The notes below the pieces were generated by a model. It did no database searches and had not been told where the DNA came from. It saw only the letters and a list, made by a program, of their open reading frames with translations. A stretch of DNA of 64,000 bases from Macrostomum lignano (Eukaryota). A program made the translations under genes and the position numbers. How positions within the stretch are numbered: position 1 is the first letter of the stretch; each line of letters opens with the position of its first letter. Location of the stretch: positions 434,001-498,000 of the forward strand of contig NIVC01001022.1 in the NCBI GenBank assembly GCA_002269645.1. The letters run 5' to 3'. Positions 35,253-64,000 of the stretch are shown piece after piece.

Positions 35253-36791
35253 TTAGGCATTCGAATGACAATTTAGTGTCTGTTGCATACTAACATTGTA
35301 TGTTAGATCGGTCCTACTTTTGCAAGAACGATGACCGCAGAGACTCAATTCCTTGCATGACACACAACAGCGCAGTCTACCAGACGGGTGGAGACACATA
35401 TAGTACAGTGCCATGAACAGTAGGCCAACGAAAAAGGAACCCAGTCCCATCGATACGAGGACTAATGAAACGTTAAACTGATACGTGAACGGCGCCAAAG
35501 ACTCGTCGCGAAGGAAGAACCAAATGCCAAGTAGAGTGAAATTCTCTACACCAACCAACGAATAGTACACGATATACTTCAGCCTAGTACGGCCTTCGAG
35601 CACGTTAAAATAATCGAAACACATGACAACCGAGACTACTAGATTGTAGCAAAACTCTAAAAATCTCTTGCCGTTGCAGAAGTCGGTACGTTGGCACATA
35701 ATCCAGACCAGCATTAGGCCATAATGGCATGCTAGAAAGCCAATAAGAAGAAAGGGTCGCGTAGCCGCAGTCAAGGATAACGCCATTACCCGCGAGAAGA
35801 CAATAAACAGTTTCCACAATAGCATAACAATAAAGGCTGGTATGCTTAGCTTCTTCTTGTCGATTCGGCCCGACCTCAAAGCCGACTGATAAGAGCAAAC
35901 AGCGTAGCTCAAAGCGAACAGCGAGATCAAACTGGACACAGCCTGCAGTCGCCATTGAAGCGTACTTGTAACTGACCAATCGGTTATAAAACTAACGTAC
36001 GACGCTAGATTATAAGTAACCTCTCCGTTAAAAGCACTAGTGCTGATACTACTACTACTACTATTAGTAACGGCACGACTCTTCAACATGATAGACAACT
36101 GCAACAACAACTGGGGCGCCGATTCTGTAAACGCTTCGAACATTCTCAGCATAGCGTTATCGGCTTCGTTTGACAACACTTGAAAGTACAAATCGTCTCG
36201 ACGCTTCCGGATAGCGCCAATCGCTACGGCGAAGCATTCGCCAACTCGCAACACCGGGGCCAGCTGTAGCACGTGCAGAGCTAATCGAAAGCACCAACGA
36301 GCCCTACTAGCTGGACTGCGTTGATGATCGGCGAAATACCAGGCCAGGCTAAAGCCGGCTATGACTAAACTGGGCACAGCGACGAATACCGTTGTCAAAG
36401 TGAAGTGCAGCATAGCCGACTGACGATAATAAACTATCGCCAAGTAGATATCGGAACCAATGTCCAGAAAGTAGGTGCAGATGGTAAACAAGTAAAGCAT
36501 GAAATTGTAGCAAGCAATCTGAGGCATTTCGGTACAAAACACATCTGCGTTGTCGCCGCGTCCCGAGTGGAGCATCGATGCGTCTGAAGGCTCTTGCCGA
36601 CTGTCCACAACTTCTAGAGTGGCAAGTAGGTTATCACGCTGAGACGCTGCATCAGCATTCAGTGAATGCAACATGCTTCTAGTGAGTAAAACTTTTTCAC
36701 CACGTCGGCGACATTCTAAAGCTGCGACGCGAGCCAGCATTGCCTCATCAGGCAGATGCTGCCGCTGATTCAATTGTGACTGCTCGGCTGT
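35253..36791 (-). CDS. XKR: XK-related protein (XKR scramblase family); one large coding exon, first ATG at 36740, splice acceptor TTTGCAG ending at 36792
   Basis: YFLDIGSDIYLA, VPSLVIAGFSLAWY, LHVLQLAP, LRMFEAFTESAPQLLLQL, FSRVMALSL and YY....VEN motifs typical of XKR proteins. Confidence 0.88.
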   Translation of the reverse strand, partial: TAEQSQLNQRQHLPDEAMLARVAALECRRRGEKVLLTRSMLHSLNADAASQRDNLLATLEVVDSRQEPSDASMLHSGRGDNADVFCTEMPQIACYNFMLYLFTICTYFLDIGSDIYLAIVYYRQSAMLHFTLTTVFVAVPSLVIAGFSLAWYFADHQRSPASRARWCFRLALHVLQLAPVLRVGECFAVAIGAIRKRRDDLYFQVLSNEADNAMLRMFEAFTESAPQLLLQLSIMLKSRAVTNSSSSSISTSAFNGEVTYNLASYVSFITDWSVTSTLQWRLQAVSSLISLFALSYAVCSYQSALRSGRIDKKKLSIPAFIVMLLWKLFIVFSRVMALSLTAATRPFLLIGFLACHYGLMLVWIMCQRTDFCNGKRFLEFCYNLVVSVVMCFDYFNVLEGRTRLKYIVYYSLVGVENFTLLGIWFFLRDESLAPFTYQFNVSLVLVSMGLGSFFVGLLFMALYYMCLHPSGRLRCCVSCKELSLCGHRSCKSRTDLTYNVSMQQTLNCHSNA

Positions 36792-36825
36792 CTGCAAAGT
36801 TTAATTGGTGACCTACATTTACTGC

Positions 36826-46400: not shown

Positions 46401-49400
46401 GCCAAGGATTAGAAGCATCGGCCGCATTAGCTAATCCAGTGTGAACCCAGTCGTGCAGTCGACGCAAATACGGCCGGCTGGACTCTGTCAGGAAATGAGT
46501 GAGTAAAAGTCTTTCAAACTGACAAGCTCCAAGAGGTGACGCGCCGGCAAGGGCAGCTTCCAGTCGGTTTAGCAGTTTCATGCCTCCGCTAATAAACTGA
46601 CCAAACTCGGAGGAGTCTCCGCTAGGGCAGCAGAGTTGATAAACTAGCTCCACTTGTTGGCAGAATGGACGCATCCTGACCAATAGTTGAATTGGTCCGC
46701 AACTGGGACTGTAAGCTGACAGCACTAATGATTCGTGCAGATTCAAGTAGCTCTCTAAGCAGCCTAGGAAGGCCGAGGCGATCTGTGGAAATTTTTAGAT
46801 TCTCATTTTCAGGACTTGTTGAGATTAGTTCTATAGGTTTGATGATACTGATACCTGAGATGGGACTTGGATACCTGAGATGGGACTTGGATGCCTGAAA
46901 TGGGACTCGGATACCTGAGATGGACTTAGATACCTGAGATGGACTTAGATACTTGAGATGGGACTCGGATACTTGAGATGGACTTAGATACTTGAGATGG
47001 GACTCGGATACTTGAGATGGACTTAGATACTTGAGATGGGACTCGGATACTTGAAATGGACTTAGATACCTGAGATGGACTTAGATACTTGAGATGGACT
47101 TAGATACTTGAGATGGACTTAGATACTTGAGATGGACTTAGATACTTGAGATGGACTTAGATACTTGAGATGGACTTAGATACTTGAGATGGGACTCGGA
47201 TACCTGAGATGGACTTAGATACTTGAGATGGACTTAGATACTTGAGATGGACTTAGATACTTGAGATGGGACTCGGATACCTGAGATGGACTTAGATACT
47301 TGGGATGGGACTTGGGTAAGAGGAGATGGGACTCGGATACCTGAGATGAACTTAGATACCTGAGATGAGACTTTGATATGGGATTTCGATACCTGAGATG
47401 GGACTTTGACACCTGAGATGGGACTTTGGCACCTTAGAGACTTCGGTGAATCTGAGAACACGTTCACTCCTCAGATAAAATCCAGACAGTTCCGCAATAA
47501 ATCAATCTTCAAAAACCAAATGTCACCTGTCCAACATCGGTCATTCTCCGTCCCACAGTCAGCAGGTGTCTCAGCTTGCGTATCTGACCGCCAGCCACCA
47601 GCAGCGGCCGCAACAGGCGAGCCAGCGATTCAGGTGTACAACCTTCGATAGCCAATCCAGCCCGAACCGTCAGCTCAGCAGAATGTGAGTCATCCCGATT
47701 CGATGACAATGGAAAACAGACAGACGCTAAACCAATCATTAGGGCTTGAGCATCTAAGCAGAGTTTCTCGCGCGATACTCTGCTATTAACTGGTGGATTT
47801 GGTCGCCGATCTGCAGCGCACGCCAGGGCGATGTCCAGTGCCCCTGGACCGGCCTCAGTCAGGTACGGCAGCTCAGGCGGCACAGGGCGGCCTCGGTGTA
47901 GCCAGCTGTACGCTAGCGGCTCGCTTGATGGCGGTATTACAGCAGCTTCCTCGTCGTCATGGTCGCCGTCGCTATCGCTAAGCTGCGGAGATAATTGTCC
48001 ACCGCCGCCGATGCCCGCAGCACCACCGCCTGTTGAACCAGTGTAGCCATCGTCTGGCGATATCGGGCCGGCCAATTGTTGACTGTTGCCATGGCGACGG
48101 TGTCTACGCTGCCATACTGAAGCGCTGTTGTTTCTATTAACCCGGTCTCTCTGCGCGTGACAAACGTTTGACGATAGAAAAGCCTTAGATATATATAGAA
48201 ATTGCATTGGAAACTATGCTTAAAAATAGGGAAGCTTAGCGTACAAAGTCCAGGTGGTTAATACTACTGCTAGTAGCTTAAAACCCGAATTATACTACTT
48301 TCTAAGTAGCTTACCTCTATCTAAGTAGCTTAAAACTCGAATTATATTACTTCTGTGAGAACCTAAATCATACTGCTTTGCAACTAGATTAGCGTCCGAC
48401 TTTTTAAACTACTGCTAGTAGCTTAAAAAATCAAAATTAATACTACTGTTCAAGTTTCTAAGTAGCTTAAAAACTTGAATTTATACTACTTTTGTGAGTA
48501 GCTTAAAACCCAAATTATACTACTTAACAACGCAGTAGATTAAAACTCGAATTATACTACTTAACTTCGCAGTAGATTAAAACCCAAATTATACTACTTA
48601 ACTTCGCAGTAGATTCAAACTCGAGTTATATTACTTAACTTCGCAGTAGACTAAAACCTAAATTATACTACTTAACTGCGCAGTAGATTAAAACTCGAAT
48701 TATACTACTTCGGAAGTAACCGAAGTTGCAGAAGTCTGCAAACTCCACGTTTACAGATTTACTCAAAGTTTGTCAGCACTCACAACTGCACCAGTCTCAG
48801 ACCAGTCGTCCACGCTAGCAGCGTCCAGCGATTCGCCAATGCTGCCACCGTCGGTGCCACCAAGGCCTCCAATAGCGTTCCAAATCGCAGTCAGTCCAAC
48901 ACCAGGCTGCTGGTGAAACAGCACAGTATCTGGCAATATCAAATCTGGACTGGAAAATCCCATTGAACACTCGACATCCATGGAACGATCTTCTTCTTGT
49001 TCATCGCCAGACAAGCAGCCATAATCATCTTTCAGACTGCCGATTGCAGATGACATCAAAGAAGCCGATTCAAAGCATTCAATAGGATACTGGCGATAAT
49101 CAATAGAATGATGGCTTAATTTACCATGCTGTTGCATTGGAAGTCCTTGACTTCTACCGTTCTTACTAGCAGTAGTATCAGCAAGTGAAAGCAGAAATTT
49201 CAAAGCCGATGTTGCAGAATCTGTTGTTGACAAAGACGATGCTAGTATAGAATCTGACAATGACTCGATTTTATTGCAAATCCGTTGAATTCTTTCGCTA
49301 CCGTCGCTATCTGTTAAACGTAATTGCATTACGTAATCAGAAATTGCCAGCCGAATACTAGCGTCTTTATCGGTCCGTTGTGATGAAGCCCAAGCTATAC

Positions 49401-49641
49401 TAGGATTGCAGCAGTGCGGCCCAGGCTGGCGGCTCAGCAAGGCATTGTAAGCGATTTGGCGAAATCTTCGTTGCAATAATGCAATTGAATTAGCTGTAGT
49501 ATCGTTTGGCAATAAATTTGACGTGTAGAAATTGATCAGACGTTCAAGGTGAGAAATCTCTGTCGGCTTCGGAGCCAAGGGCGCCGCCGAAGGCGCTCCC
49601 ATGGCAACCGTTGGCTGACCGGGCCGACAGGTGGCAGCCAT
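40459..49641 (-). CDS. TUBGCP6: Gamma-tubulin complex component 6. Exons 49641-48784, 48183-47527, 46782-45854, 44668-42943, 42235-41514, 40579-40459
   Basis: N-terminal RRFRQIAYNALL (cf. GCP6 KKVAYNALF); ELPYLTEAGPGALD; GRIP2 motifs RRFCFLADGRF, YESGWPANLILTDSALSRY, ACHDRFL; C-terminal HLDELVLRLDFNGYY. All five junctions are GT-AG and phase-consistent; start codon is tentative. Confidence 0.9.
40648..41465. repeat. ~26-30-bp minisatellite (ATCTAGCAAGACAATCTCATGATCTCATCG) in the last TUBGCP6 intron
   Basis: Tandem array. Confidence 0.93.
43975..44300 (-). repeat. Coding 27-bp tandem repeat (SDVAAGEVKP-like, 9-aa period) in TUBGCP6 exon 4
   Basis: About eleven in-frame units of AACATCAGACGGTTTGACCTCAC(T/C)AGCGG(C/T). 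Confidence 0.9.
46850..47435. repeat. 19/20-bp minisatellite (GATACTTGAGATGGACTTA) in a TUBGCP6 intron
   Basis: Tandem array. Confidence 0.93.
48270..48715. repeat. Degenerate ~37-bp tandem repeat (AGTAGATTAAAACTCGAATTATACTACTTAACTTCGC) in TUBGCP6 intron 1
   Basis: Recurrent AAAC(T/C)CGAATTATACTACTT units. Confidence 0.8.
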
Positions 49642-49761
49642 GAAGAAATTAAATATAAAAATGAGCAAAATAAGCGAATGGTACTGCTGCACACTCGCTG
49701 AGCATTATATTAAATAATAATATCAACCTATTTGATGACAACACCGTTACTAAATTATTCC

Positions 49762-50478: not shown

Positions 50479-50844
50479 GGGGGGCCGTAGCCCAGCGGTA
50501 GCGCAGCTGCTCTGGTGTGCCGCGACCCAGGCTCGATTCCAAGTGCAGCCACATTAATTTGGGGCTGAATTGGAATCTTGGCTTGGCTCGCTTGTGCAAT
50601 TAACGGCCTTGAGAGCCAACCCCCCCAAGGCGCAGTGAAGTGTACATGCCTAACAATTGATAAAGTTAGGGCCGCTGTACACTCCTGTGTGAGTGTGTGC
50701 CTGCGTAACGTATCCGCGCGCTTGTATGCCTGCTCAGGGGAGTCGGCGGAATGGGCAGTAATGCCTCTCGCCGGTTGTGTGCCAAATGACGCTTAAATTG
50801 CGCCAGGGTGCACACAACCCCCCTGCCTCTAAAAATAAAAAAAA
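50479..50844 (+). mobile_element. tRNA-derived SINE, family A, copy 2
   Basis: A-box TAGCCCAGCGG, B-box-like GGCTCGATTCC, body shared with 32518-32874, A-rich tail, imperfect TSD CA(C/T)AGTCACAAA (50466-50477, 50845-50856). Confidence 0.85.
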
Positions 50845-51275
50845 CATAGTCACAAACAAGGACTACTGAATAGACGTGGACTGGAGATACAGAACACCTT
50901 CAATGAAGATTATATGTACAAAAATAACTGATTTTTAGTCATCTATGTTTTATTTAGGAAAAACTCTCCAGTCCAGGCATTATTTAGTTGTCCCTGTAAG
51001 CAAGGATACTGGTTAAAAAGGTTGCGACAAAAAATAGTGACAGAAAGTTAAAGGTGAAACGATAGAACTGGAATATAATAGTAGGTAGTATTATTATTAT
51101 AGATACAACAATATTTACTAATGTAATTATCGACAGAAATTTACAAAGAAAAAATTGAAAATTTTGCTTTCAATGAAATTTGAAAAAGAAACAAATTTCC
51201 GCATGATTTCAATAAGTAGTATGACGCAGATTCTATTATTATTATTTTTCAAAAACTGATTGTTTCCCATCAAGA

Positions 51276-51545
51276 GGGGTTGTAGCCTAGTGGTCAGAGC
51301 GTCGGACTCTCGACTGAAAGGTCGGGGGTTCGATTCTCGACCCTCAACTCGGAACAATTTGTGTCCTTGAGCTAGACACTTAACTAAAATGGGTGCCAGC
51401 ATTAGCTGGGGTAATTGAGGGTGTGTGTGGCGACCCCCCCCCCTCCCCCCAGTCATTGGACTGAACAGCTGAGCTGTCGGTTGCACATCTGGCCTAATTA
51501 GGGAAGGTGTAATCAATTATAATTATCATAATAATTTATTATTAT
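51276..51545 (+). mobile_element. tRNA-derived SINE, family B, with a CORE/V/Meta-SINE-like motif
   Basis: A-box TAGCCTAGTGG, B-box GGTTCGATTC, followed by TGTGTCCTTGAGCTAGACACTTAAC and an AT-rich tail. Confidence 0.75.
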
Positions 51546-52029: not shown

Positions 52030-52777
52030 CTGTGAAAAATGAAAAATTTCAATTAGAAATACAATATGAAAGCCGTACCCAGGCCAAGAAGCATCCTAGA
52101 GTCACCGAGTTGTGTTTTAAAACACAAGAGTTAAAGAAATCACAAGAGTCGATAGAGCCCAACAGAGAGTTGCTTGCAACGACTTTTTAGCGATTTTTTG
52201 TCACCGGTTCGCCTGTTTCCGTTTATGAATATGTCTATGGTCTATGTTTTCTCCACTTGGTCGGCTTCTTCCTCTGGGCCACGACGGCTAAAGGGAAAGA
52301 AATTAGCATTTACAACAAGAGAAAAGGTTATCTATGTTAATACTACAGCCTAGCACGCGCGTTAACTGTGAATTTCCCCCGCGCACAAGCTTCAGCCATT
52401 AATAACTTAGGGGGGGGGGACTATTATTAAATTCCAACAGCCAATGAAATTAATGGGGGGAATATCCCGATTTTTTGAAGTCTTGGACATAGACTCGTTT
52501 TCAGAGGAGCGATCCTTTCTATTCCTTCATCCATGGCTTAACTGTCAACTTGGCTGACAAAAAAAGCAATAGGCATTTTATCATAGACGATAAAGTGAAT
52601 AGCTTGTTAAACTTGTAAGTTTTTTGTTGACATCTATAAGCAGCCAGCCTTGTGAAACACAAAGCCGAAAGTCTGTCTTTGAGATAGAATTATTGATAGT
52701 CGGGCGATTCTGTTCAATCAACCAATCGTCCTCATCCTCGCCATCACTAAACATACATGACCCGCCTGGCTGTCGTA

Positions 52778-53130
52778 ATCCGGTTTTCATCCGGCCTCGT
52801 CCGGTTTAACCCGTTTTAGGGGGGTGTTTCCGGACCAAAAAGATGTTGATCCGGTTTTGATCCGGTTTTTGTTTCCGGACCAAAAACCGGGCCGAAATCC
52901 GGAGTAAAGCCGGATGAAAGAGTTCTCTTTGTGACTCTTTTCATCCGGTTTTTGATCCGGTTGACTCGTCGATTAAACTCGAACAATCAGCCGGATTGAA
53001 AACCGGATGAAAACCGGAAGAAAGCATATTTTGGTCCGGAATTTCGTCCGGTTTTACATCCGTCCATTGACCCGCCGAAAGCCGGATAAAGACCGATGCA
53101 CGAAACGGAAGAAGTCCGGATGAAATACCG
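52778..53130. repeat. Left subterminal CCGG-motif cluster of the EnSpm-like element
   Basis: Roughly twenty (A/T/G)TCCGG / CCGGAT motifs in both orientations. Confidence 0.8.
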
Positions 53131-53936
53131 AGTTCGGAAAGGGGACTTGGATTTTTTATGAGTATGTAATTTGCAAGACCGCGTTGAGTTGTTATTAGGT
53201 AAAGAAATATGTAATGAGTGACTAGTGTGACCACTACTGTGTTATTTGAGTTTTTCTGTGCTTTTTTAAAATAGCTGTGTTATTGTGTTTTTTTAAGAAG
53301 TCATCCCTTTTCTTTAATGTGCTGCTTGAATTAGCTGGAATGAATTAAAACGAGAATAGCTATTCGGACAATAAGTAAGCATTGGCAAAATTGCTATAGT
53401 GAATGTTTTTCACTTTTTCTTCATTTAAGTAGCTGCTGTGTTTTTTCTTTCTAGCTGTGTTATTTCTCAGATTTTTGTTGCTGGTCACACTGAGTGACGT
53501 AAATAGTGAAGTACTCGTAAGTATTGAATTATAGAGCTGTATCGCCAGACGGTATAAAAGCCATACATTTTGTGGCAAAAGTCGTAGTAATTTCGTGCCA
53601 TATGTTATCCTAATTTCAATTTAAATACACTGTTGTCTATGTTGCCTATGGCCTATGTTTAATGGAATTTTCCAAAGTTTATGGCTCATGCTTTGTGATT
53701 CCATAACTAATTATGTTTAGTTGTCTGTAGCGTATCTTTCTTGTCAGTCCAGCAATCAGATCAAAGACACAATAATGAAAAAGAAGTAAGGGAGTATATT
53801 ATATTATCAGTTGAAGGAACAAAGACATGCTGAATATATTTCAGATTTAAATGCATGTGTAGGTTCATGCTAAAAATCCGTCTAGAATTTTTTTCGTACT
53901 ACTGATAATGTGACGAAGCAAACCTCATTACAGCGC

Positions 53937-56910
53937 ATGGATATGGATGGCGATGATCGTAGCACTCGCCGTCGCGACTGGATGCGACACTACATGCGCC
54001 AACGCAGGCTGTCTGCCAGACGCGGGCGTGGTTCTGCTGGCGTAAGCCGATCACGTTCTTCGGAAAGGGCATCAGCTGAAGCCGCGCACAATGGTCCGGG
54101 TGCTACCAGCTCATGTGCTACCAGCTCATGTGCTACCAGCTCAGGTGCTACCAGCTCTGGTAACTGCAACACTGACGGAAAACCTGCAGACATTTCTGAA
54201 AGTGAGACACTTGTCTCTATGAGGCGATGTGACGTTGAGATGATGTGGCTGATTATACAGTACAATTTTTTTGCACCGCTCATCCCGCACAGGTGAGCCA
54301 CTGGACAACTCTGCGAGCGTCTCATCGGATGACGAAGAGGACGATAACAAAGACGGGCGATCCCACACAGGCGATGATGGCGAGGAACCGCCATCGGGTG
54401 CAGACACGTCCGCTGGGTCCCATACATCGGACTCGCCATCGGGAGCAGACACGTCCGCTGGGTCCCATACATCGGATGACGAAGAGGACGATAACGAAGA
54501 CGGTAATATTCCTTTGACGCATTACTGTCCGTGACACAATACAGAATACAGATTGCCTGCATACGCTGCTCCACACATTCACACACCGGGCACTGTGTGA
54601 GTCTTGCTCTAATTAGTCTTACTGAGTATACAGTAATCTTTTTCCACCGCATATCCCACACAGGCGATGATGGCGAGGAACCGCGTCGTATCAACGCCAG
54701 GCTGCTGGAAGACTGGCACCCGGGATTTCCGCACACACTAGGCGAGGCTCTTTTTGAGGTCAATTCCTGTGCGGAGGATCTCAAACTGTCCCGTGAGAAG
54801 TTTACAAGACTTCTAGAGATGTTGCACCGCCTTGTGCCCAACAACAGGCTGCCCAAAACTGGACGTGCTGCGCGGGATGCGATAAAGACTGCTCAGTCAT
54901 TCTCTGGAACGACGCTGTGCTCCACAGTCTGCAACGAGTGTTACAAGAACTCTCCCGGACGGTGTGATCCAAGCACCGCAACGTGCGTCCACTGCGGAGG
55001 ACGCAGCGTCGCAAATTTCTGGCACTTTGATGGTCCTATGCAGCTGAAAGCGCTTGTGATGTGGCGTGGAATGCTCGACCACGTTGTGTTCCCTGCCGAC
55101 CGTGCCATAGATCCCGAGGTGCTCCACGTGCGTAGCAGCGAACTGTACAAAGAATTCGTCGATGGCATCGATGTGGAGAGTCGCAGCGACGTCTCCGGCA
55201 TCTTATGCTCGGATGGGTTCCCGCTTTGCAGGACAAGTACTGTTGAGGTGTGCCCCTTTTATTTGTGCTTCGTTGAAGTTCACGACCGGTACAAGTTGCA
55301 ATTCGTAATGAAGCTCGGAGTCTGGGCAGGAACTACAAAGGTGCATCCCAAGGCATGTCTACCTATTATAGTTGACGGACTTAACGATCTGCGTCTGAAT
55401 GGTATACAGTATGTGGATCGACATGGCGTTCGGCAGCGTCTTCGGGTACATGTATTGTTCGCCATGTTTGACGCACCTGCCAGGGCAGACGCTTTGTGCT
55501 TTAAGCGCTTTTCCGCCGTATACGGATGCGACAAGTGCTACCTACGGACGTCAGTTCATCCGTCAGGCCACGGCAGAGTGTATGATGTGGAGTTGACAGA
55601 CGCCATGCAAATGAACGCACGCCGCCTCGGATGTGTCCAGACAGTAGTTCGATCGCTGAATGACACATGTATCCTTGCGGAACACCGGACGTTACGTGGC
55701 AACGGAGATGACACTCTGGGTGTACGTGGACAATCTCCGCTTGGTGATCTGTTTGGCTTCGACTTTGTCAGAGCGACGCCTCCTTGCTTTCTCCATCAGC
55801 TTTGCTTGGGATTAGTGCGCTGGCTACTGTTTCAGCTTTTCCTCGTGCGCCACGAGAAACCTGACCGGTTCGCGGAGAATTGCCCCGACCTGCACAAACG
55901 GATTGGTGACATATCACAGCGCATGCGCTACATTTGAGTTCCCAGGTCCGTTCAGCGACATTCCATCCGACTGCTGAAGGACATCAGGCACGTACGGGGA
56001 CATGAACTGGCATTGTGGATAATTGCTTACTTCCCAATGCTACTAGAAGATTTTCTGCCAGAGGCTCACTATTGGCATTTGCTCGTGCTTTCGTCCGCAG
56101 TGTTCTGGTTGACGCTTGAAGGTGCGCCAAAGAGTGAACTGTGTCACGTCGAAGTTTCGCTGAGGCACTTCCACGCCAATTTGGCTCGTCTATATTCTCT
56201 TCGCGCACTCACGTATAACGCCCACCATGTTTGTGCCCATATGGTGTCATACGCGTATCTCGCGGGCCCACTGCACACGCAATCGGCAGGGCTTTTTGAG
56301 ACGATGCACGTCCACTTACGGCAGCGTCTTCACGGTTCGCGGCGTACTGACGTTGAAATTGTACATGCCATTGAGCGTGAATTTGCTCTCATAGAAGCTG
56401 AGAGCCGACTGAAGAGCGATGACTTGGAGCCGCAGCAGCACGTGACTCACAGAATGCAGTGCATTATTCACTTCGGCGTTAAGCTGCGACGACCATGGGT
56501 ACGGCGGACGGATGGCACACGGCGTCGCTTCCAAGTGGGTTGTTTATCGAAGTATTTCGACAGCCTATAGGCGATGAGCATCCGAAAGTCTCCTGCCTTG
56601 ATGCCACTCGTGGTTCCAGCGCGTGGAGACCATCAGTGCGACTGCCACAGGTGTTGTACTGACGCTGCGTGAGCTGCGTGGGCAGGACGTCGAAATCGAT
56701 CCTCTGGAGATGCTGTGTGCCGTGCCGAAGGAATCTGCTCACCGCGGTTGCCGATTCGCACATGTCAGGCGGCTCCTCGCCGATCCTTTTGGAGTCGCAG
56801 AGTACCTTGGTGAAGTCAGGCAGGCTGCAACGGAGGACATCGTCGGCGCCTGCGTTGTGTCAAACACAAAGATTACTTTGGTTCCTTATGCGCAGTTTGG
56901 CTTTTCTTAA
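53937..56910 (+). pseudogene. Spliced Tnp2/Transposase_21-type DDE transposase: exons ~53937-54201, 54293-54502, 54664 onward. In-frame TGA at 55935-55937; further lesions after ~56540
   Basis: CNEC..CVHC zinc motif, CSDGF (D1), MFDAPAR (D2), GCDKC, LHQLCLG, GPL..SAGLFE (E). Both introns have phase-1 GT-AG junctions. Confidence 0.85.
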
Positions 56911-57640
56911 CAAATATTTTTAGTCATGCTGCGTCCCATGCAATTTAATTTTGCGTACATCCTCTATATGCGTACATTTCGCGTCACTGATTTTAGTGCG
57001 GGCCTCGCTATATCACGCTCGTATGCTGGTTCATCTGCTAAACTGCACTTGTATAGAAGTATACTGTCTGGCTTGCTCCGTCTGGGCAATCGCGAATCTG
57101 AACTGCAACTGTTTTGTGTCCATATTTTTGAGTAACTATTTTTATTTAATTACGTCCGTACGGGTGAGAAAGAGGATACCAGCGCTGATACGAGCTGTAA
57201 CAGGCGTTATGGTCCTGTCCTTTTAACTATCCTTTAAGCTGCCACCAAAGTTGTAACAGATCTTTTGCCTCTGTCTGATAATTTTACCTATTTCCTAGAA
57301 TTTCATTCAAATACTTTCTGGGTAGCGTTTCTGGTAGCGTTTCTGGTAGCGTTCTGGTAGCGTCTTATGTATTGGCCTGAGCGGTCTTAGTACTGGTACA
57401 TGTATTAGTTTGCAGTCTTAATCGGGCGTTCGCCAAGATTAGAGGGTCACGGTACAACTCTCTCTGAATCCTCTTTGTATATTATCCCACTCCATTCTCT
57501 TAGTAAGTTTCTGAGCACTATTACTCTCTCTCCTTGAAATAACTAACTCAATAATTATAGAACCAACAGTCTACCATAGGCACTAGCAAAACGAATTATT
57601 AAGGTATTATAGAGACATACGAGTATAATAGGCACTGGTA

Positions 57641-58945
57641 CGAGGGGCACTAGATAAGTTTTTAGCTGCGGTCAAACCGTTTATTCAAATTAGGCCATAT
57701 TTTCTGAGCATATTGAATAAGAAGTTTTATCATGGTCCCCAAAGTTTCATGCACCTAATTGTCACCATTCTCTCACTGTCGCATTTTGTCTCAACAAGGT
57801 CTGTGACTCTTTCAGCACTGTAATGGAGCTCAATCGTGAACACTTTCGTGCCATGATTTTCTACGATTTTAAGAGCGGCTTGACATTTCACCAGTGCCAC
57901 GAGCGGCTGTCTGCTGCCTTTCCTAACCTTGCGCCATCCATCGCCACCGTCACCGCCTGGTTCCGGGAGTTCAAGCGTGGCCGAGACAGCTTGGAAGACG
58001 AAGGTCGAACCGGCCGACCTGTTTCAGTGACGACACCTGAAACTATCGACCGCGTGCGGCGCATGATTGAGGCTGATCGGCGAGTGACGTATCAAACGAT
58101 TGAGGCATGTCTTGGAATCTCATCGCCGACAGTCGCTTCTATCCTTCGTGATCACCTCGCTGTCCGCAAGCTGACCAGTCGCTGGGTGCCGCATTTGCTC
58201 ACCACCGAGCAGAAGCAGGCCCGCATGAGCTGGTGCCAGGAAATGCTGGACAGGTTTGGCGGAGGGACGTCGAAGTCTGTCACAGACATTGTCACATGTG
58301 ACGAAACGTGGTGTATTGCTACGAACCCGAGCGGAAATGCCAGTCGCGTGTGTGGGCTTTTGAAGATGAAGCCCCGCCGACCAAGGTTGTCAGGGGTCGG
58401 AGCACTGGCAAGCAAATGGTGGCAACTTTCTTCCGAAAGACTGGCCACATTGCGACTGTAGCACTCGAGAGCCAGCGCACAGTGACTGCAGATTGGTACT
58501 GCACCGTCTGCCTGCCGCGTGTCATCAGCAGCCTTAAAGAGGCGCGGCCAAAGTGCGGCGTTCGAGGTCTCTGGCTGCACCAGGACAACGCCAGTGCGCA
58601 CACGGCGAATCGAACTCGAGAGTTTCTACAGACGGTGGGCTTCCAGCAGCTCAGTCATCCACCATATTCACCTGACCTGGAACCGTGTGACTTTTTTTTA
58701 TTTCCATTCATCAAGAATTCCATGCGAGGGTGCCGATTTTCCTCCGCCGAAGAGGCTGTTGATGCCTATAGATCGGCCGTTGAGGGGGTATCCCACTCAG
58801 AGTGGCGCCACTGCTTTGAAACTTGGTTTGAGCGGATGAGGCGGTGTATCCAAGCTGATGGAGAGTACTTTGAAAAGCTCTGAAAGTTTCATCTTTATAA
58901 CTGTTACATGTTGACCGCAGCTAGAAACCCATCTAGTGCCCCTCG
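57641..58945 (+). mobile_element. Full-length (1305 bp) mariner nested in the EnSpm-like element; DD34D transposase 57823-58883 with one frameshift near 58310
   Basis: ~35-bp TIRs CGAGGGGCACTAGAT..TAGCTGCGGTCAA; TA TSD (57639-57640, 58946-58947); WVPHLL, VTCDETW, LHQDNA, YSPDLEPCDFFLF motifs. Confidence 0.93.
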
Positions 58946-58995
58946 TACATTTATGTCAATTAAAAAAATTTTGCTCCTTAACCCAACTGCAGTGA

Positions 58996-59661
58996 ATGTC
59001 GAGCAAATCCAAGCGAGCGAGCGAGCAGGCCGTCATCGACTGGTCCAAGCTGCTCGATACTGTCATTCCAGATTCCGTGCTTGGTGACCTCGATGACCGC
59101 TCCAGTGGCGACGAGACCACGGTGGCTGGGTCGCCGCCGCCAAAGTGGACTCCTGAGGTCTCACCCGACGGCGACGTTATGTCACCGTCATTGCTGGGTC
59201 CGTCGTCCCCTGTCGCATGCAGCACGCAAGCTGCATGCAAAGAAGGTCCTGGCTACTCCGTCCTGCCATCGTCGCCATGTCTGCCTAGCTCTAGCGCAAG
59301 CCTTCAACAGCCCGGCGCAGGTCGGTACACCCTAGAAGACTATAACAGACTGCCTGACGAGGCCCCCCCATCTTATGAGTCGCGCCGCCGAGACGAAAGA
59401 AGACGCCTACCTGCCCAGTGCTGTCCAGACTGTGCGGATTGGTATGGGGCTCTGCCCCCAGAAGAACGGGACAGGCGGTTGCAGAGTCATGGTCGTCACC
59501 GGCATCGTACAATCCTGCAGGCCCCGAACTTCTTTGCCATTGACATGCCACCCAGCCCGCCGCCTGCTCCCCTGGAGCACATGAAGGTCGGCAAGCGTCG
59601 ACGGCGCCCTCTGCGCGACATATCCGTCTTACCGAAAGAGGCCCCCCAGAAGAAGCCGTGA
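58996..59661 (+). CDS. RBBP8-like: Transposon-borne 221-aa protein with a CtIP/Sae2 C-terminal domain
   Basis: RRRDERRRLPAQCCPDCADWYGALPPEERDRRLQSHGRHRHRTILQAPNFFAIDMP aligns by eye to human CtIP [59 protein letters not shown] (recalled from memory); basic KRRRRP tail; intact ORF. Confidence 0.8.
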   Translation: MSSKSKRASEQAVIDWSKLLDTVIPDSVLGDLDDRSSGDETTVAGSPPPKWTPEVSPDGDVMSPSLLGPSSPVACSTQAACKEGPGYSVLPSSPCLPSSSASLQQPGAGRYTLEDYNRLPDEAPPSYESRRRDERRRLPAQCCPDCADWYGALPPEERDRRLQSHGRHRHRTILQAPNFFAIDMPPSPPPAPLEHMKVGKRRRRPLRDISVLPKEAPQKKP

Positions 59662-60210
59662 GATCTGTAGTTACAATGGACTGCTAAGCGGGGACAGGCT
59701 TTTCTATTTTAAAACTAAAGAAGTATGTTTCGTGAAGTTATGAAGTAATGAAGTAATAGTGAACTTCGAATGTTCCCGATCTAATTGTCGCAAGAGCTCT
59801 GCTTCCATCTTTTGTGCCACGACTGCCTTCTGCTGCAGAACTTATATCGAAACTTTATCGAACTTTTATGCAAAATACATTAGAGGTTGGCCCTCTGTGC
59901 ATGTGTAATGCAACGTGTGTCAATTTTGTTCTCTAAGATGTTTCCAGACATTTGTTTCATTACTTTCTTTCATAACATTGCGTCCTACGATCTTTAACGC
60001 TTGTGGTCTATGGGGTTGTAGTACAAAACCTTTTAGTTTTAAGAATGCTCTTAACTCCTATCTCGTCTGTGTAAAAAGTTTAGTACGCTAACTAAACGTC
60101 ACCTCATTAACCTCATTAATGAAAAGATTAACGTCACCTCATTAAGAAATTTCTGATGCTGTTCTGCCCCAAAGCAACTTTGGTTATCTAAACGTCTTTC
60201 CAGAGCGACT

Positions 60211-62323
60211 ATGCATGAAGCCACCGCACGTAAACGCACCGCAGCAAAACAGAAAGCCGACATGCCGGTCAAACGACACCGCCCAAGTGTAAAAAAGGTG
60301 GCGGCCAAGGTCTCTTTGGTGGCTTGCAAGAAAGGGACGGCTGCAAGGGAGACCCAACCGCCAGATTCTGCGGCTACTGTTCTGCAGGCTGGCTTGACGG
60401 CTACAGGTGACACCCAACCGCCAGATGCTACAGCTACTGCACTGCAGGCTGAGGTGACGACTGCAGGTGACAACCAACCGCCAGGTGCTACAGCTACTGC
60501 ACTGCAGGCTGAGGTGACGACTGCAGGTGACACCCAACCGCCAGGTGCTACAGCTACTGCACTGCAGGCTGAGGTGACGACTGCAGGTGACACCCAACCG
60601 CCGGATGCTGCGACTACTGCACTGCAGGCTGAGGTGACGACTGCAGGTGACTCCCAACCGCCGGATGCTGCGACTACTGCTCTGCAGGCTGGCGCAACAG
60701 CTGCAGGTTGCAATCCGTCGCCTGATATGGTGCCGTACAAAGCAGAGAGGACGCAGCGGTACTTCCTTTTTCAATATGACGACTATCTTGACAAGACCCA
60801 AGTTGTCGGCACTGATGGATCCACGGCAGCACCGCTTATTGTTGCCGTTGCGCGGGAATCGGCTATTCCCGTACAAGTAGGCTGTCGCGTCTGCATTGTC
60901 ACGGCGAAGACCAACCGAAAGACCGCAAAGCGATACCCAGGGAGGCTTGTACGGGGACCATTTTCTAATAAAGCCGAAGCCTCTGGAGCCGCAAGCTTGA
61001 CTAACGTCCACGCTCAGCCGACGGAGCTCCCCCGAGCTTGCGTGTCCTGCAAAGGACTCCTTCTCGAGTTGCAAAGGGCCAAGACACTCACTAATGCACA
61101 AGGTGAGTATACAGAGGTTCTGCCGTAGTGCATGTGTACATGTTAGCATACATACATACATACATACATGTTTTGTTTGTATACATATACGTACATCCGG
61201 TCATTGGTAGTCTAGGGTATTGAATAAACCAATATTTCAGGTTCCGAGGTTCGGGCAGCCCGCGTCACTGAAGCCCAATTGCGAGAAGAGATAAAAGTTC
61301 TGCAGCAGAAGGCAGTCGTGGCACAGAAGATGGAAGCAAAGCTCTTGCGACAATTAGATCAGGAACGTACGAAGTTCACCAACCTGGAACGGAATGTAAA
61401 GACTGCTAACGCGCTAATCGTTCGGGCCTCACAGTGTATGGTGCCACAGTCTGCAGACGCAGCAGCGATCCCAGCTTCTGGCTGCCAGCCAGGTCCAGTG
61501 GAGTCGGACAGCACGGCTTCTGACGCTGGCGATGACGCGCTGGCGGACCCCGGAGGTGGCGCCTTTGATGCTAATTGCGAGCTGTCGGCGTCCCAGACTC
61601 GCCAGTTACTGCTCACCTGTAACAAGGCGGGTCCATCGTCGGCTAGTCTGCTGTCAGGTGGCACAGTGTCACTGTCCGACAAGCAACCGTATCTAAAAAC
61701 GTCGGTGCAGCTCCGATCCGAACTGGACAGCCGCCTAGCCGACCTGCAAAAGGCGATGATGGAAGGCGTCGATCTCGATGAGCGCGACGAGACTGAGCTT
61801 CAGGGCCATTTTTACTGACACCGAGCTGGCGAACAGTAGCCTGTCAGGTCGCAAGGCTTGCGGCTACATCTCAGTGCCGGCAAATCCCGGAAAGCTAGCC
61901 GCCGCCAAGCAGTGGCTTGCCAATGCTGCCGTGCAGTACACTTCTGCAGAGCTGCAGCGCGCGTTTACGCGCTGCGGTGAAACTGCACGGGAAAGACTGG
62001 GGATGCCAAAGCGCACCCGTGGCACACTAAACGGTCGGCCTGGTACAAAGACTGCCAAGCCACGGCGAGGCGGCTCTGCCCAATCAGGGCCAGGCAGCTC
62101 GGCTAAACGGGGGACAGGCAGACACGAAGACGTGGGTACGATTGTGCGCATAATCGGACCGACGAGTGAGGCGGAAGAAGTCGCCGCTGACTCGGACAAT
62201 GCCCCCGCTAGCGCGATCTTTGACCAGGCCAGAGCTGTCTTCGCAGAGGTTGGGCCCACAAGTCAGCGTCCGGCCGGCGATGTGGACAATGCGGAAGATA
62301 TGCTACTTTCCCTGATGGGATAG
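60211..62323 (+). CDS. Transposon accessory protein (TnpA-like role inferred): basic N-terminus, 20-aa repeats, coiled coil and a probable C-terminal BEN domain. Exon 60211-61102, exon from 61241; join to the 61778-62323 frame unresolved
   Basis: Phase-1 junction G|GTGAGT ... TTTCAG|GT; BEN-like SATRLSFRAIFTDTELANSSLSG..ANPGKLAAAKQWL..ELQRAFTRCGETARE. Confidence 0.55.
60350..60700 (+). repeat. Coding 60-bp tandem repeat (QPPGATATALQAEVTTAGDT, 20 aa)
   Basis: About five to six in-frame units. Confidence 0.85.
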
Positions 62324-63235
62324 TAGGCTATATAGTCGTGGGCCAGTCGTTTTGTCGCAGACTATAGGATATAAGAGGGAGCCGTGTGCCATTGCCAGTG
62401 GCCGCGGCGTGGCGCGAATATGCTCATGACACTACTGCTTCTGCGACTGCAACTTAGCTATTGGTCACGAATCAAATATGTAGCGCCTAGGGGTCTTAAG
62501 AGCATGTGCTCGATTAGACAGTAGCATATCATTAGGACAAAAATTCCTCAAAAATTCTGCAGTATGTAAAGTGCACGATGTACCCATCGCCTGCAATCTG
62601 TACATCATGGTGGGTGTTTTAGAACAGTAACGTTACTTAACGTTACTAACGTGTACAGTAATCACTGTTCTGCAGATAGGTAATATCGCCCTCGGGTCTG
62701 CGTTTCTGGTTTTCTGTTGACACTTTCTGTTTCACTCCCAGTATGGAAAATGTATATGTCGCTATTTTTTCTGTTGTCCCCAATTTTATAAGTGAGTTTT
62801 TTTTTCTGCGCCTGTTTCTTCGTGTAGCTTGAAGTTTTTCTTCTGTGAAATTTCTAGTTTTTCTGCCTGGTACTAATTTGTAGCCGCCCAAAAGACAGTG
62901 TGTCGTCTCATTCTCCATTTCTCCTGATTTGTCCACCCAATGTGAGGTTTTGCCATTCTATTTTTGACTCAAGCATGTCTTGTGTATTTGCATTTTTAGC
63001 GACACGCAACTTTAAAAGTTATCTTCGGTTTCAATATATTCAGCTTCCACTACTCTATCCAGCACAGTGAATTAGAGGTTGGCCACCCTCTGTGCAAGTG
63101 CAATATACCTTGCTTTCTTTGAGGTGTTTCCAGCAATTTGTTTTCTTACGTTTTCAAAAGATTTCGTCTTGTTGTCAACCTTACTTAGTTCTTTAACATG
63201 TCATCTGCTTTACCATCCGGTAGACATGTGCATAT

Positions 63236-63605
63236 ATTTGATCTGGCATTCATCCGGAATTTCGTCCGGTTTCTCATCCGGTGGAGGCGTGCATACATTT
63301 GATCCGGCATTCATCCGGAATTTCGTCCGGTTTCTCATCCGGTGGAGGCGTGCATACATTTGATCCGGCATTCATCCGGAATTTCGTCCGGTTTCTCATC
63401 CGGTGGAGGCGTGCATACATTTGATCCGGCATTCATCCGGAATTTCGTCCGGTTTCTCATCCGGTGGAGGCGTGCATACATTTGATCCGGCATTCATCCG
63501 GAACTTCGTCCGGTTTCTCATCCGGTGGAGGCGTGCATACATTTGATCCGGCATTCATCCGGAATTCGTCCGGTTTCTCATCCGGTGGAGGCGTGCATAC
63601 ATTTC
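63236..63605. repeat. 59-bp tandem repeat in the right subterminal region of the EnSpm-like element
   Basis: TTTGATCCGGCATTCATCCGGAATTTCGTCCGGTTTCTCATCCGGTGGAGGCGTGCATACA, about six copies with four CCGG per unit. Confidence 0.9.
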
Positions 63606-64000
63606 GTCCGGATTCGCTCCGGAATTTGCTCCGCCCTGTTCTCCGCGGCTTTCCGGATAGCTTCCCGGATGAATTTCCGGACTAATGTTGGTTGAACACC
63701 CGGATGAAAGGTCAAATATGCATGTTTTCATCCTGTTTGTAAACTTTTCATCCGGCTCTCATCCGGTTTTTAAATGGGACATTTGTATTACGTACCGGAT
63801 GAAATTCCGGATGTCGCTCCGGATGAAAACCGGATTACGACAGCCAGGCGGGGACAAATTTCATGAAGTTTGAAATCATGAAATCCACCCCTGGGCCTCC
63901 CCCCTCGAGAGATTAAAAATAAAGATTTTGTCTATGATCTATAGAGTTTTAGTTGATGAATATGTTATCTCAATGGCCAATTTTACGAAGCACTTACCAC

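What the first reader, a model, noticed from the sequence alone, without database searches (positions are those of the whole stretch)
58996..59661. DNA transposon carrying a captured CtIP/Sae2 C-terminal (MRN-activating) domain
Seen: an intact 221-aa ORF between the TIRs of the EnSpm-like element. It contains R..ERR.L, CxxC (59422-59433), Y..LP.EER..L, RHR (59494-59502), an NF-aromatic segment and a basic KRRRRP tail. An in-frame TGA directly precedes its ATG, and no N-terminal coiled coil is present. Established: the CtIP/Sae2/Ctp1 C-terminal CxxC-RHR region stimulates MRE11-RAD50 endonucleolytic cleavage at blocked and hairpin-capped ends. Inference: the element encodes its own DNA-end-processing modulator. 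It could open flanking hairpins or steer repair of excision breaks, for example toward homologous gap repair that restores the donor copy. I know of no described cut-and-paste transposon with this cargo.
Basis: partly seen in the sequence, partly recalled or inferred. Interest (0 to 1): 0.93.

Follow-up and report, generated by a model that had tools for sequence, protein, structure and literature searches.

The report
Transposon carrying a CtIP DNA-repair domain
A flatworm cut-and-paste transposon carries an intact, long-conserved copy of only the MRE11-RAD50-activating tail of the DNA-repair protein CtIP, so the element may steer repair of the breaks it makes, but only this one, partly damaged copy could be examined.

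Summary
ORF 58996-59661 (+, 221 aa) is intact, TGA sits directly before its ATG, and every motif lies where stated.

Its C-terminal half is a real CtIP/Sae2 C-terminal domain.
- Pfam SAE2 is sub-threshold (17.0 bits against a 19.8 cut-off).
- An exhaustive search hits Macrostomum lignano CtIP at E 6.7e-23 and fish CtIP at about 1e-4.
- Profile-profile probability is 99.1%.
- The flatworm host CtIP also fails the Pfam cut-off.

The ORF lies between perfect 34-bp inverted repeats (52761-52794 and 63819-63852). These bound an 11.1-kb DNA transposon with subterminal repeats and a CACTA/CMC-like transposase. The termini are not CACTA, and Pfam support for the transposase is weak.

M. lignano has a separate, full-length, coiled-coil CtIP gene. 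The ORF has diverged from it to synonymous saturation, yet it has evolved no faster. It is therefore neither the host exon nor a decaying recent copy of it.

This copy is damaged: an in-frame stop in the transposase, a mariner nested 48 nt upstream of the ORF, and an inverted duplication downstream.

Presence in other copies, expression and activity could not be tested.

The parts
52761..52794 (+). Left terminal inverted repeat of the 11,092-bp element (CCCGCCTGGCTGTCGTAATCCGGTTTTCATCCGG). The host flank ends in GA.
   Evidence: I4: 34 nt, 100% complementary; only these two matches in the window, 0 expected. One search gives the flanks.
52795..53160 (.). Left subterminal repeat region with CCGGATGA / TCATCCGG motifs in both orientations.
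   Evidence: 23 of the 26 occurrences of the 8-mer in the window lie in the two element ends, and none lies in the element interior. (families D3, D4, D7).
53937..54296 (+). First ORF of the element (119 aa, basic and Ser-rich). TTACAG sits 3 nt before its ATG. Local duplications follow at 54323-54684.
54531..56570 (+). Transposase-like reading frame of about 680 codons, interrupted by one in-frame TGA at 55935-55937. It has a CACTA/CMC-like DGF...D.PA...G.C..C layout.
   Evidence: There is a weak DUF4218 hit (E 0.044) in the downstream part and no other Pfam hit. The motif resemblance to CACTA TnpD rests on my own knowledge.
57641..58945 (+). Nested mariner element with TA target duplications at 57639-57640 and 58946-58947. 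Its transposase is frameshifted. It ends 48 nt before the CtIP-like ATG.
   Evidence: I3: 38-nt arms, 92%. HTH_48 at 2.7e-10, DDE_3 at 4.2e-7, Transposase_1 at 9e-6. Sequence read.
58987..58992 (+). CTGCAG, which matches the M. lignano spliced-leader trans-splice acceptor motif [T/C]TNCAG. It sits 3 nt before the ATG.
   Evidence: The motif is taken from PMC8629364. Its function here is inferred.
58996..59661 (+). CtIP-like ORF of 221 aa. Residues 1-107 are an orphan, disordered, Ser/Pro-rich region.
59317..59637 (+). CtIP/Sae2 C-terminal domain (aa 108-214). It holds CPDC at 59422-59433, RHR at 59494-59502, NFF at 59527-59535, a conserved S187-P at the position of human T859, and KRRRRP at 59593-59610.
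59759..59848 (-). Inverted 90-nt copy (93%) of the start of exon 2 of the downstream gene (61290-61379).
   Evidence: (I1).
60211..61818 (+). Third gene of the element. Exon 1 is 60211-61102 and holds six 60-nt (20-aa) tandem repeats. A GTGAG...TTTCAG intron spans 61103-61240. Exon 2 is 61241-61818 and looks coiled-coil. TTCCAG sits 7 nt before the ATG.
   Evidence: No Pfam family was found.
61778..62323 (+). Overlapping ORF in another frame (181 aa). It may be the continuation of gene 3 after a frameshift.
   Evidence: No Pfam family was found.
63214..63627 (.). Array of 6.8 copies of a 61-bp unit carrying the subterminal TCATCCGG motifs (right subterminal region).
63819..63852 (-). Right terminal inverted repeat. 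The host flank starts with GA, giving a possible 2-bp target duplication.

Best explanation
The ORF is a stand-alone paralogue of the C-terminal domain of the flatworm CtIP. This is the part of CtIP that binds and activates MRE11-RAD50. It is carried as an internal gene of an 11.1-kb TIR DNA transposon of CACTA/CMC-like build in Macrostomum lignano or a close relative.

Shown here.
- The homology is real.
- The ORF lies between the element's perfect TIRs, downstream of the transposase and on the same strand.
- A distinct full-length host CtIP gene exists in the closest identifiable genome.
- The ORF split from that gene long ago and has kept evolving as a constrained protein.
- This particular copy is damaged.

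Inferred origin. An ancestral element captured the terminal exon of a CtIP gene. The whole homologous stretch lies inside the single last exon of the host gene.

Inferred expression. The ORF is translated from its own ATG as a separate cistron after spliced-leader trans-splicing at CTGCAG|TGA ATG.

Inferred function, about 35-40% likely. The protein docks on the RAD50-MRE11 surface that CtIP uses. At transposase-made ends, whether hairpin-capped or protein-bound, it promotes endonucleolytic clipping and resection. That would favour homology-directed gap repair, which restores the donor copy. Because the protein lacks the tetramerisation coiled coil, it would need to be brought to the break by the element's own proteins.
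For: Homology.
- E 6.7e-23 to P0001, 1.4e-13 to P0002, and 2.4e-4 and 7e-4 to fish CtIP, in a library of 1.84 billion proteins.
- P0002, P0004, P0005 and P0006 pass Pfam SAE2, and the two fish proteins also carry CtIP_N.
- hhalign probability 99.1%.

Transposon context.
- perfect, unique 34-bp TIRs.
- the subterminal motif is confined to both ends.
- a transposase-like frame with a weak DUF4218 hit.

Separate host gene.
- P0001 and P0007 are M. lignano Mlig004387g2 and g1.
- the coiled-coil N-terminus of P0007.
- a three-exon, 3.3-kb gene between acetyl-CoA synthetase and EMP24 genes on two homeologous contigs.

Same or closely related genome.
- the shared repeat copy is 80-86% identical to M. 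lignano copies, which are 79-84% identical to each other.

Selection.
- identity by codon position is 0.69/0.71/0.39, pS is 0.78 (saturated), dN is 0.36, and the only indels are in frame.
- Tajima relative-rate counts are 9 vs 12, 8 vs 8, 6 vs 9 and 11 vs 11, all with p > 0.4.
- there is no DNA-level match to the host gene.

Independent cistron.
- acceptor motifs sit 3-7 nt before the ATGs of all three long ATG-started + strand ORFs of the element, against a background of 2-2.5% of ATGs.
- Any exon cis-spliced at 58992 meets TGA in frame, or runs in a frame that ends at 59335.

Mechanism.
- A 15-residue C-terminal Ctp1 peptide suffices to stimulate Mre11 endonuclease in vitro, and the Sae2 C-terminal domain binds the Rad50 outer beta-sheet and Mre11 (bioRxiv 10.1101/2023.08.05.552090).
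Against: - Only one copy was seen. Its transposase carries a stop, so this copy is not autonomous.
- No other copy, transcript or predicted protein like the ORF was found in any collection.
- The species is inferred from shared repeats, not proven. If the window comes from a different Macrostomum species, the old divergence could be ordinary orthologue divergence followed by a recent capture.
- The N-terminal 107 residues have no homologue, and no constraint on them could be tested.
- Human CtIP 790-897 alone supports no single-strand annealing in cells (PMC7261161).
- The CDK-site threonine (human T847) is replaced by Gln-Ala, although the host protein shares this change.
- The 2-bp GA target duplication has a 1-in-16 chance of being accidental.
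- The transposase family assignment is weak.
Confidence: 0.45

Rival explanations
1. Passive transduplicate. The element picked up the last exon of a host CtIP-type gene fairly recently, and the exon has no role in the element's life cycle. The source would be an unannotated paralogue, the orthologue of a species other than M. lignano, or a gene of an earlier host before horizontal transfer. The constraint detected would then have been accumulated while the sequence was still a host gene.
For: Capture of host gene fragments by CACTA and other DNA transposons is common (PMC8903248 and PMC13317346). The whole homologous region lies in one host exon. The element looks young, with 100% identical TIRs and one stop in about 680 transposase codons. 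An intact 221-codon ORF therefore needs no selection since capture. The N-terminal 107 aa have no homologue. No similar protein is annotated anywhere.
Against: No second CtIP-like cluster closer to the ORF than Mlig004387 appeared in 1.84 billion representatives. The ORF has its own ATG with a stop directly before it and an acceptor motif like the element's other genes. Random fragment capture does not predict that. The ORF also ends exactly at the family's natural C-terminus.
Confidence: 0.27
2. Same transposon gene, opposite action. The tail-only protein acts as a decoy. It occupies the CtIP site on RAD50-MRE11 without tetramerising or bridging DNA, so it blocks host resection. That would protect transposition intermediates or push repair toward end joining.
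For: The tetramerisation domain is absent. It is required for CtIP and Sae2 function in cells, and CtIP 790-897 alone is inactive in a cellular SSA assay (PMC7261161). The binding residues are conserved.
Against: Short C-terminal peptides of Ctp1 stimulate the nuclease in vitro rather than inhibit it. Genome-wide inhibition of resection would harm the host, and so the element.
Confidence: 0.15
3. The ORF is the terminal exon of the host's own CtIP gene, and the surrounding transposon sequences are unrelated insertions.
For: In M. lignano the whole domain is encoded in a roughly 190-codon terminal exon of similar size. There are acceptor-like motifs inside the ORF at 59066 and 59100.
Against: No CtIP N-terminal coiled-coil coding sequence exists anywhere in the 59 kb upstream (all E > 0.28), while the host gene spans only 3.3 kb. 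The ORF lies between matched TIRs with transposase upstream. A separate complete CtIP gene exists on two homeologous contigs of the closest genome. An exon joined at 58992 cannot read into the domain.
Confidence: 0.05

Closest known systems
CtIP / RBBP8 / Sae2 / Ctp1 C-terminal domain (Pfam PF08573 SAE2)
   Same: The motif order is the same: R-x-(D/E)-E-R-R-x-L, CxxC, L-P-x-E-E-R-x-x-L, RHR, NF-aromatic, a conserved S/T at the human T859 position, and a basic RRRRP tail at the natural C-terminus. Similarity to fish CtIP and to two short CtIP-like proteins is significant.
   Different: There is no N-terminal tetramerisation coiled coil, and the N-terminal half is an orphan. The CDK-site threonine is replaced by Gln-Ala, as in the M. 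lignano host protein. The sequence scores below the Pfam cut-off. It is encoded inside a transposon.
Macrostomum lignano host CtIP, Mlig004387 (PAA54340.1, PAA88737.1)
   Same: It is the closest relative: 55-57% identity over about 110 residues. Lineage-specific features are shared, namely CCPDC, QAPNFFAI(D/E)MPP and MK.GKRR.RPLR.
   Different: The host protein has the coiled coil. Its gene has three exons and lies between host genes. Synonymous sites are saturated, and no DNA-level similarity to the ORF remains.
Pack-type and CACTA gene capture (transduplication) in plants
   Same: A TIR DNA transposon of CACTA-like build carries a piece of a host gene between its ends (PMC8903248, PMC13317346).
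   Different: Pack elements are non-autonomous, and their fragments are usually recent, DNA-similar to the parent and often chimeric or decaying. Here the element also encodes a transposase. The cargo is a complete functional domain with its own start and stop, anciently diverged and still constrained.
RPA-like single-strand-binding gene of plant Helitrons
   Same: A eukaryotic DNA transposon family carries a host-derived DNA-metabolism factor as a second gene beside its transposase (PMC4683698).
   Different: The transposon class differs (rolling-circle), and so does the pathway. The Helitron gene is documented across many copies and species. Here only one copy is known.
En/Spm (CACTA) two-gene organisation, TnpD plus TnpA
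   Same: There are long TIR-flanked subterminal repeat arrays and a transposase. Further same-strand coding regions lie downstream of it. The comparison rests on my own knowledge of En/Spm.
   Different: The termini are CCCGCC rather than CACTA. The possible target duplication is 2 bp rather than 3 bp. No Transposase_21 hit was obtained. The downstream genes are unrelated to TnpA.

Membership tests
CtIP/Sae2/Ctp1 (PF08573 SAE2 C-terminal domain) | Score at or above the Pfam gathering cut-off (19.8 bits) | tested here: not met
   The full ORF scores 14.7 bits and the C-terminal 115 aa score 17.0 bits, E 0.013. The bona fide M. lignano CtIP also fails, at 13.4-14.3 bits.
CtIP/Sae2/Ctp1 (PF08573 SAE2 C-terminal domain) | Significant sequence similarity to proteins that pass PF08573 and carry CtIP_N | tested here: met
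   Searches give E 1.4e-13 to P0002 (SAE2, 37.6 bits). They give E 2.4e-4 and 7e-4 to fish CtIP, which carries CtIP_N (111-150 bits) and SAE2 (35-40 bits). hhalign probability is 99.1%.
CtIP/Sae2/Ctp1 (PF08573 SAE2 C-terminal domain) | CxxC and RHR motifs in the conserved order and spacing | tested here: met
   C143-P-D-C146 and R167-H168-R169. C143, C146, H168 and R169 are invariant columns in the seven-sequence alignments.
CtIP/Sae2/Ctp1 (PF08573 SAE2 C-terminal domain) | CDK phospho-site after RHR (human T847, Sae2 S267) | tested here: not met
   The ORF and the M. lignano host both read QAP where fish CtIP and P0002 read TP. S. pombe Ctp1 also lacks the phospho-site yet is active.
Full-length CtIP/Sae2 orthologue | N-terminal tetramerisation coiled coil | tested here: not met
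   It is absent from the ORF and from the whole window. It is present in host P0007 and in P0002.
CtIP/Sae2/Ctp1 | Stimulates MRE11-RAD50 endonuclease | not testable with these tools
   This needs biochemistry. No complex prediction was available, and the PDB holds no CtIP C-terminal chain.
EnSpm/CACTA (CMC superfamily) | TIRs ending in 5'-CACTA | tested here: not met
   The termini read CCCGCCTGG.
EnSpm/CACTA (CMC superfamily) | Short target-site duplication (3 bp; 2-4 bp across CMC, from my own knowledge) | tested here: inconclusive
   GA is present on both flanks, but a 3-bp match fails. The chance of a 2-bp match is 1 in 16.
EnSpm/CACTA (CMC superfamily) | Arrays of short subterminal repeats in both orientations inside both ends | tested here: met
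   23 of 26 CCGGATGA/TCATCCGG sites in the window lie in the two ends. See also families D3 and D4 and the 61-bp array.
EnSpm/CACTA (CMC superfamily) | Transposase of the Transposase_21 / DUF4218 type | tested here: inconclusive
   There is no Transposase_21 hit. DUF4218 hits at E 0.044 in the expected downstream position. The DGF...D.PA...G.C..C layout was judged by eye.
Pack-type transduplicate | Non-autonomous element whose insert is DNA-similar to a parental host gene | tested here: not met
   A transposase frame is present. There is no blastn match to the M. lignano CtIP loci, and pS is 0.78. A closer unknown parent cannot be excluded.
Tc1/mariner (the nested element 57641-58945) | TA target duplication, short TIRs, HTH plus DDE transposase | tested here: met

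The most novel reading that the evidence does not exclude
A family of CACTA/CMC-like DNA transposons in Macrostomum stably encodes its own MRE11-RAD50 co-factor. This is a tail-only CtIP, expressed as a trans-spliced cistron of an operon-like transposon transcript. The element uses it to control how the breaks or hairpins made by its transposase are processed. For example, it could force resection and homologous gap repair, so that excision becomes replicative.
Probability: 0.3. Interest if true: 0.85.

Novelty: new variant of a known kind. Interest (0 to 1): 0.62.

Why it matters
Cut-and-paste transposons depend on host double-strand-break repair, both to heal the donor site and, through homologous gap repair, to gain copies. 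Eukaryotic elements that carry their own repair-pathway factor are rare. The RPA-like gene of Helitrons is the main precedent.

If the novel reading holds, it would be a direct case of a mobile element manipulating the resection decision. It would also be a natural experiment on what the CtIP C-terminal domain can do without tetramerisation. M. lignano is transgenic-tractable, so this could be tested.

If the ORF proves to be a one-off capture, it is an ordinary transduplication with an unusual passenger.

Tried and rejected
1. The word-indexed homologue search returned nothing for the ORF, the transposase or the C-terminal alignment. P0001 is in that collection, so the tool was blind here.
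2. Exact look-ups found none of the ORF, the element's other products or four host ORFs in the collection. The source record and other copies could not be fetched.
3. Metagenome scans with the transposase and with the CtIP-domain alignment found no relatives.
4. PDB searches by sequence and by profile found no CtIP C-terminal chain. The only hits were chance topoisomerase matches at E about 0.3.
5. The AlphaFold2 model has mean pLDDT 59 and pTM 0.22, with confident helices only at 132-164. A fold search would be meaningless and was not run.
6. Pfam gave nothing on the joined transposase or on gene 3. My by-eye idea that ORF 61778-62323 is BEN-like is therefore unsupported and is dropped.
7. 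A search for a CtIP N-terminal coiled-coil exon in the window returned only noise. Gene 3's coiled coil shows no similarity to CtIP.
8. Homology between ORF residues 1-107 and the host protein is not significant by BLASTP. The 'TVIP...LG.L(E/D)D' resemblance was rejected as chance.
9. No retrocopy signs were seen: there is no poly(A) tract after the stop, and the homologous region lies within one host exon.
10. A literature search for a transposon with CtIP/Sae2 cargo found nothing relevant.

Full report
**1. What is in the sequence**

ORF 58996-59661 (+) is intact, 221 aa and ATG-initiated. TGA at 58993-58995 directly precedes the ATG.
- CPDC at 59422-59433
- RHR at 59494-59502
- NFF at 59527-59535
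- KRRRRP at 59593-59610

Residues 1-107 are Ser/Pro-rich. An AlphaFold2 run on a seven-sequence alignment gives pLDDT of about 50 there. It gives 70-86 only for three short helices at residues 132-164. Overall pTM is 0.22, so I ran no fold search.

**2. Is it a CtIP domain?**

Pfam SAE2 (PF08573) scores 14.7 bits for the whole ORF and 17.0 bits (E 0.013) for the C-terminal 115 aa, against a cut-off of 19.8. Other evidence establishes the homology.

An exhaustive phmmer search of 1.84 billion cluster representatives found six proteins. All matched through ORF residues about 108-215:
- P0001: E 6.7e-23, 57% identity.
- P0002: E 1.4e-13. It is 315 aa, with an N-terminal coiled coil and SAE2 at 37.6 bits.
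- P0004 and P0006: E 2.4e-4 and 7e-4. These are two fish CtIP proteins that carry both CtIP_N and SAE2 above threshold.

A profile of the ORF with P0001 and P0002 aligns to the fish CtIP C-terminus with hhalign probability 99.1%, E 1.2e-18.

P0001 is M. lignano PAA54340.1 (Mlig004387g2). Its cluster mate P0007 (Mlig004387g1) carries the N-terminal coiled coil. This genuine flatworm CtIP also scores only 13-14 bits on the Pfam model. The sub-threshold score is therefore a property of the lineage, not evidence against homology.

The PDB holds no chain with this domain.

**3. What surrounds it**

*The element.* A perfect 34-bp inverted repeat lies at 52761-52794 and 63819-63852. It is unique in the window, and none is expected by chance. 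Inside both ends lie arrays of CCGGATGA/TCATCCGG motifs. Of 26 occurrences in the 64-kb window, 23 are in the two ends and none is in the element interior. The right end includes a 61-bp array of 6.8 copies. Both flanks read GA, a possible 2-bp target duplication.

*The transposase.* Inside, on the + strand, is a frame of about 680 codons (54531-56570). It is broken by a single in-frame TGA at 55935-55937. Pfam sees only a weak DUF4218 match (E 0.044) in the downstream part and nothing in the core. From my own knowledge of CACTA TnpD, the layout DGF...D.PA...G.C..C resembles that family.

The element is therefore a TIR DNA transposon of CACTA/CMC-like architecture. It does not end in CACTA, and its family membership is only weakly supported.

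*Later events.* Two events bracket the ORF.
- A 1,305-bp mariner (57641-58945) has TA duplications, 38-nt TIRs, HTH_48 and DDE_3 domains and a frameshift. It ends 48 nt upstream of the ATG.
- A 90-nt inverted copy of downstream coding sequence lies at 59759-59848.

*A third gene.* Downstream, on the same strand, a third gene is supported by an exact in-frame GTGAG...TTTCAG intron. It runs 60211-61102, intron 61103-61240, then 61241-61818. No family was found for it.

**4. Host exon or transposon gene?**

*Genome of origin.* The closest identifiable genome is M. lignano. A short interspersed repeat at 51275-51513 is 80-86% identical to copies beside the M. lignano CtIP loci. Those copies are 79-84% identical to one another. 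The window is therefore from that genome or a close relative. This is an inference: none of 12 exact protein look-ups matched.

*The host gene.* In M. lignano, CtIP is a three-exon, 3.3-kb gene. It lies between acetyl-CoA synthetase and EMP24 genes on two homeologous contigs. Its last exon of about 190 codons holds the whole domain.

*Arguments against a host exon.*
- The window has no CtIP coiled-coil coding sequence anywhere upstream.
- An exon joined at the acceptor at 58992 would meet TGA in frame, or would run in a frame that ends at 59335.
- The ORF lies between matched TIRs.

I put the host-exon reading at about 5%.

**5. Age and constraint**

Against the M. lignano terminal exon, the domain is 55% identical in protein and 60% in DNA. 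Identity by codon position is 0.69/0.71/0.39. pS is 0.78 (saturated) and dN is 0.36. All indels are in frame. No blastn match survives.

Tajima relative-rate counts with four outgroups are balanced: 9 vs 12, 8 vs 8, 6 vs 9 and 11 vs 11. At several canonical positions the ORF is closer to the family consensus than the host gene is:
- DERRRL in the ORF, DDRMAL in the host
- LPPEER in the ORF, LSPESR in the host
- RRRRP in the ORF, RRHRP in the host

The ORF lineage has therefore been held to the same protein constraint as a working CtIP tail. It is not a recent copy of Mlig004387, and it is not a decaying fragment.

The element looks young, with identical TIRs and one stop in the transposase. 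A recent capture from an unseen paralogue, from another species' orthologue, or before a horizontal transfer therefore remains possible (rival 1, about 27%).

**6. Expression (inferred)**

M. lignano trans-splices about 30% of its genes and resolves operons this way. The acceptor motif is [T/C]TNCAG and the cis donor motif is GT[G/A]AG (PMC8629364).

The acceptor motif lies 3-7 nt before the ATGs of all three long ATG-started + strand ORFs of the element (53937, 58996 and 60211). It also lies before the ATG of the nested mariner. The background is 2-2.5% of ATGs.

This fits an operon-like element whose cistrons, including the CtIP-like one, are translated independently. The count is post hoc and needs RNA-seq.

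**7. Mechanism**

*Established elsewhere.*
- The Sae2/CtIP C-terminal domain binds the RAD50 outer beta-sheet and MRE11, and switches on the endonuclease.
- A 15-residue Ctp1 C-terminal peptide suffices in vitro.
- Ctp1 has a hydrophobic residue where others have the CDK site (bioRxiv 10.1101/2023.08.05.552090).
- In cells, human CtIP 790-897 without the oligomerisation domain supports no single-strand annealing (PMC7261161).

*Features of the ORF.* It keeps the binding motifs and the S/T at the human T859 position. Like its host's CtIP, it has Gln-Ala where others have the CDK threonine.

*My best guess (about 35-40%).* The ORF is a locally recruited co-activator. It promotes clipping and resection of transposase-made ends, favouring gap repair that restores the donor copy.

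*Alternatives.* The decoy or inhibitor version is a real alternative (about 15%). None of this is shown.

**8. Novelty**

Gene capture by DNA transposons is well known (PMC8903248, PMC13317346). Helitrons carry an RPA-like gene (PMC4683698). I found no report of CtIP/Sae2 cargo.

I rate the finding as a new variant of a known kind. It would be notably interesting if other copies confirm that the ORF is a stable gene of the family.

**9. Limits**

- Only one, defective copy was seen.
- The species is inferred, not proven.
- No expression data were available.
- Every search that could have reached other copies returned nothing.

Noticed in passing
window 57641-58945: A nested mariner element with TA target duplications and 38-nt TIRs. 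Its transposase is split by a frameshift (ORFs 57823-58461 and 58308-58883). It inserted 48 nt upstream of the CtIP-like ATG and may disturb that ORF's expression.
   Followed up: yes
window 53928, 57810, 58987, 60198: The M. lignano trans-splice acceptor motif [T/C]TNCAG sits 3-7 nt before the ATGs of the element's three long + strand ORFs and of the mariner transposase. The background is about 2% of ATGs. This suggests transposon genes adapted to spliced-leader trans-splicing or operon-like expression.
   Followed up: partly
window 59759-59848 and 61290-61379: A 90-nt inverted duplication (93%). The left arm is an antisense copy of the start of exon 2 of the element's third gene. A read-through transcript could fold into a long hairpin and become a source of small RNAs.
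   Followed up: partly
window 59870-59909, 63062-63104, 61113-61138: A motif of about 40 nt containing the small palindrome AGAGGTTGGCCCTCT recurs after the CtIP-like ORF, after the third gene, and more weakly in that gene's intron. It could be a shared 3'-end signal or a trace of internal duplication.
   Followed up: no
window 60211-62323: The third + strand gene of the element has six 20-aa tandem repeats (60-nt unit), a canonical 138-nt intron and a coiled-coil-like exon. An overlapping 181-aa ORF follows in another frame. No family was found, and a BEN-like look by eye was not confirmed by Pfam.
   Followed up: partly
window 54323-54684: Short exact direct duplications (32-45 nt) occur in the acidic 5' region upstream of and inside the transposase frame. 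They suggest a local rearrangement of the transposase N-terminus in this copy.
   Followed up: no
window 55935-55937: A single in-frame TGA interrupts an otherwise continuous transposase frame of about 680 codons. This copy is probably non-autonomous despite its perfect TIRs.
   Followed up: yes
window 51275-51513 and 50622-50704: Short interspersed (MITE-like) repeats are shared with both M. lignano CtIP loci, L001 and L005. Pieces match at 85-98%, and the full copy matches at 80-86%. This was used to infer the source genome.
   Followed up: yes
window 773-5202: Long strand-asymmetric minisatellites: an 18-nt GA/G-rich unit in 80 copies, followed by CT-rich 31-nt and 14-nt units (the 14-nt unit in 95 copies). 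GC skew flips from +0.58 to -0.60 across them. Many further 19-37-nt arrays lie across the window, for example at 33661-34872 and 36819-39310.
   Followed up: no
window 6660-8048, 9736-11190, 35253-36797, 41477-49692, 22163-24195: Host-type genes and another mobile element. There is a Death plus TIR-domain (MyD88-like) ORF. There is a 484-aa ORF with two SET-domain matches and an XK-related protein in one exon. Gamma-tubulin complex component exons lie on the minus strand. A reverse transcriptase/RNase H retroelement is also present.
   Followed up: partly
L001 10001-13072 and L005 10001-13315 (M. lignano): The two annotated models of the host CtIP gene differ. Mlig004387g2 (395 aa) lacks the coiled-coil N-terminus that the partial g1 model (481 aa) has, so the g2 model probably misses 5' exons. 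Both fall below the Pfam SAE2 cut-off and are named 'hypothetical protein'.
   Followed up: partly
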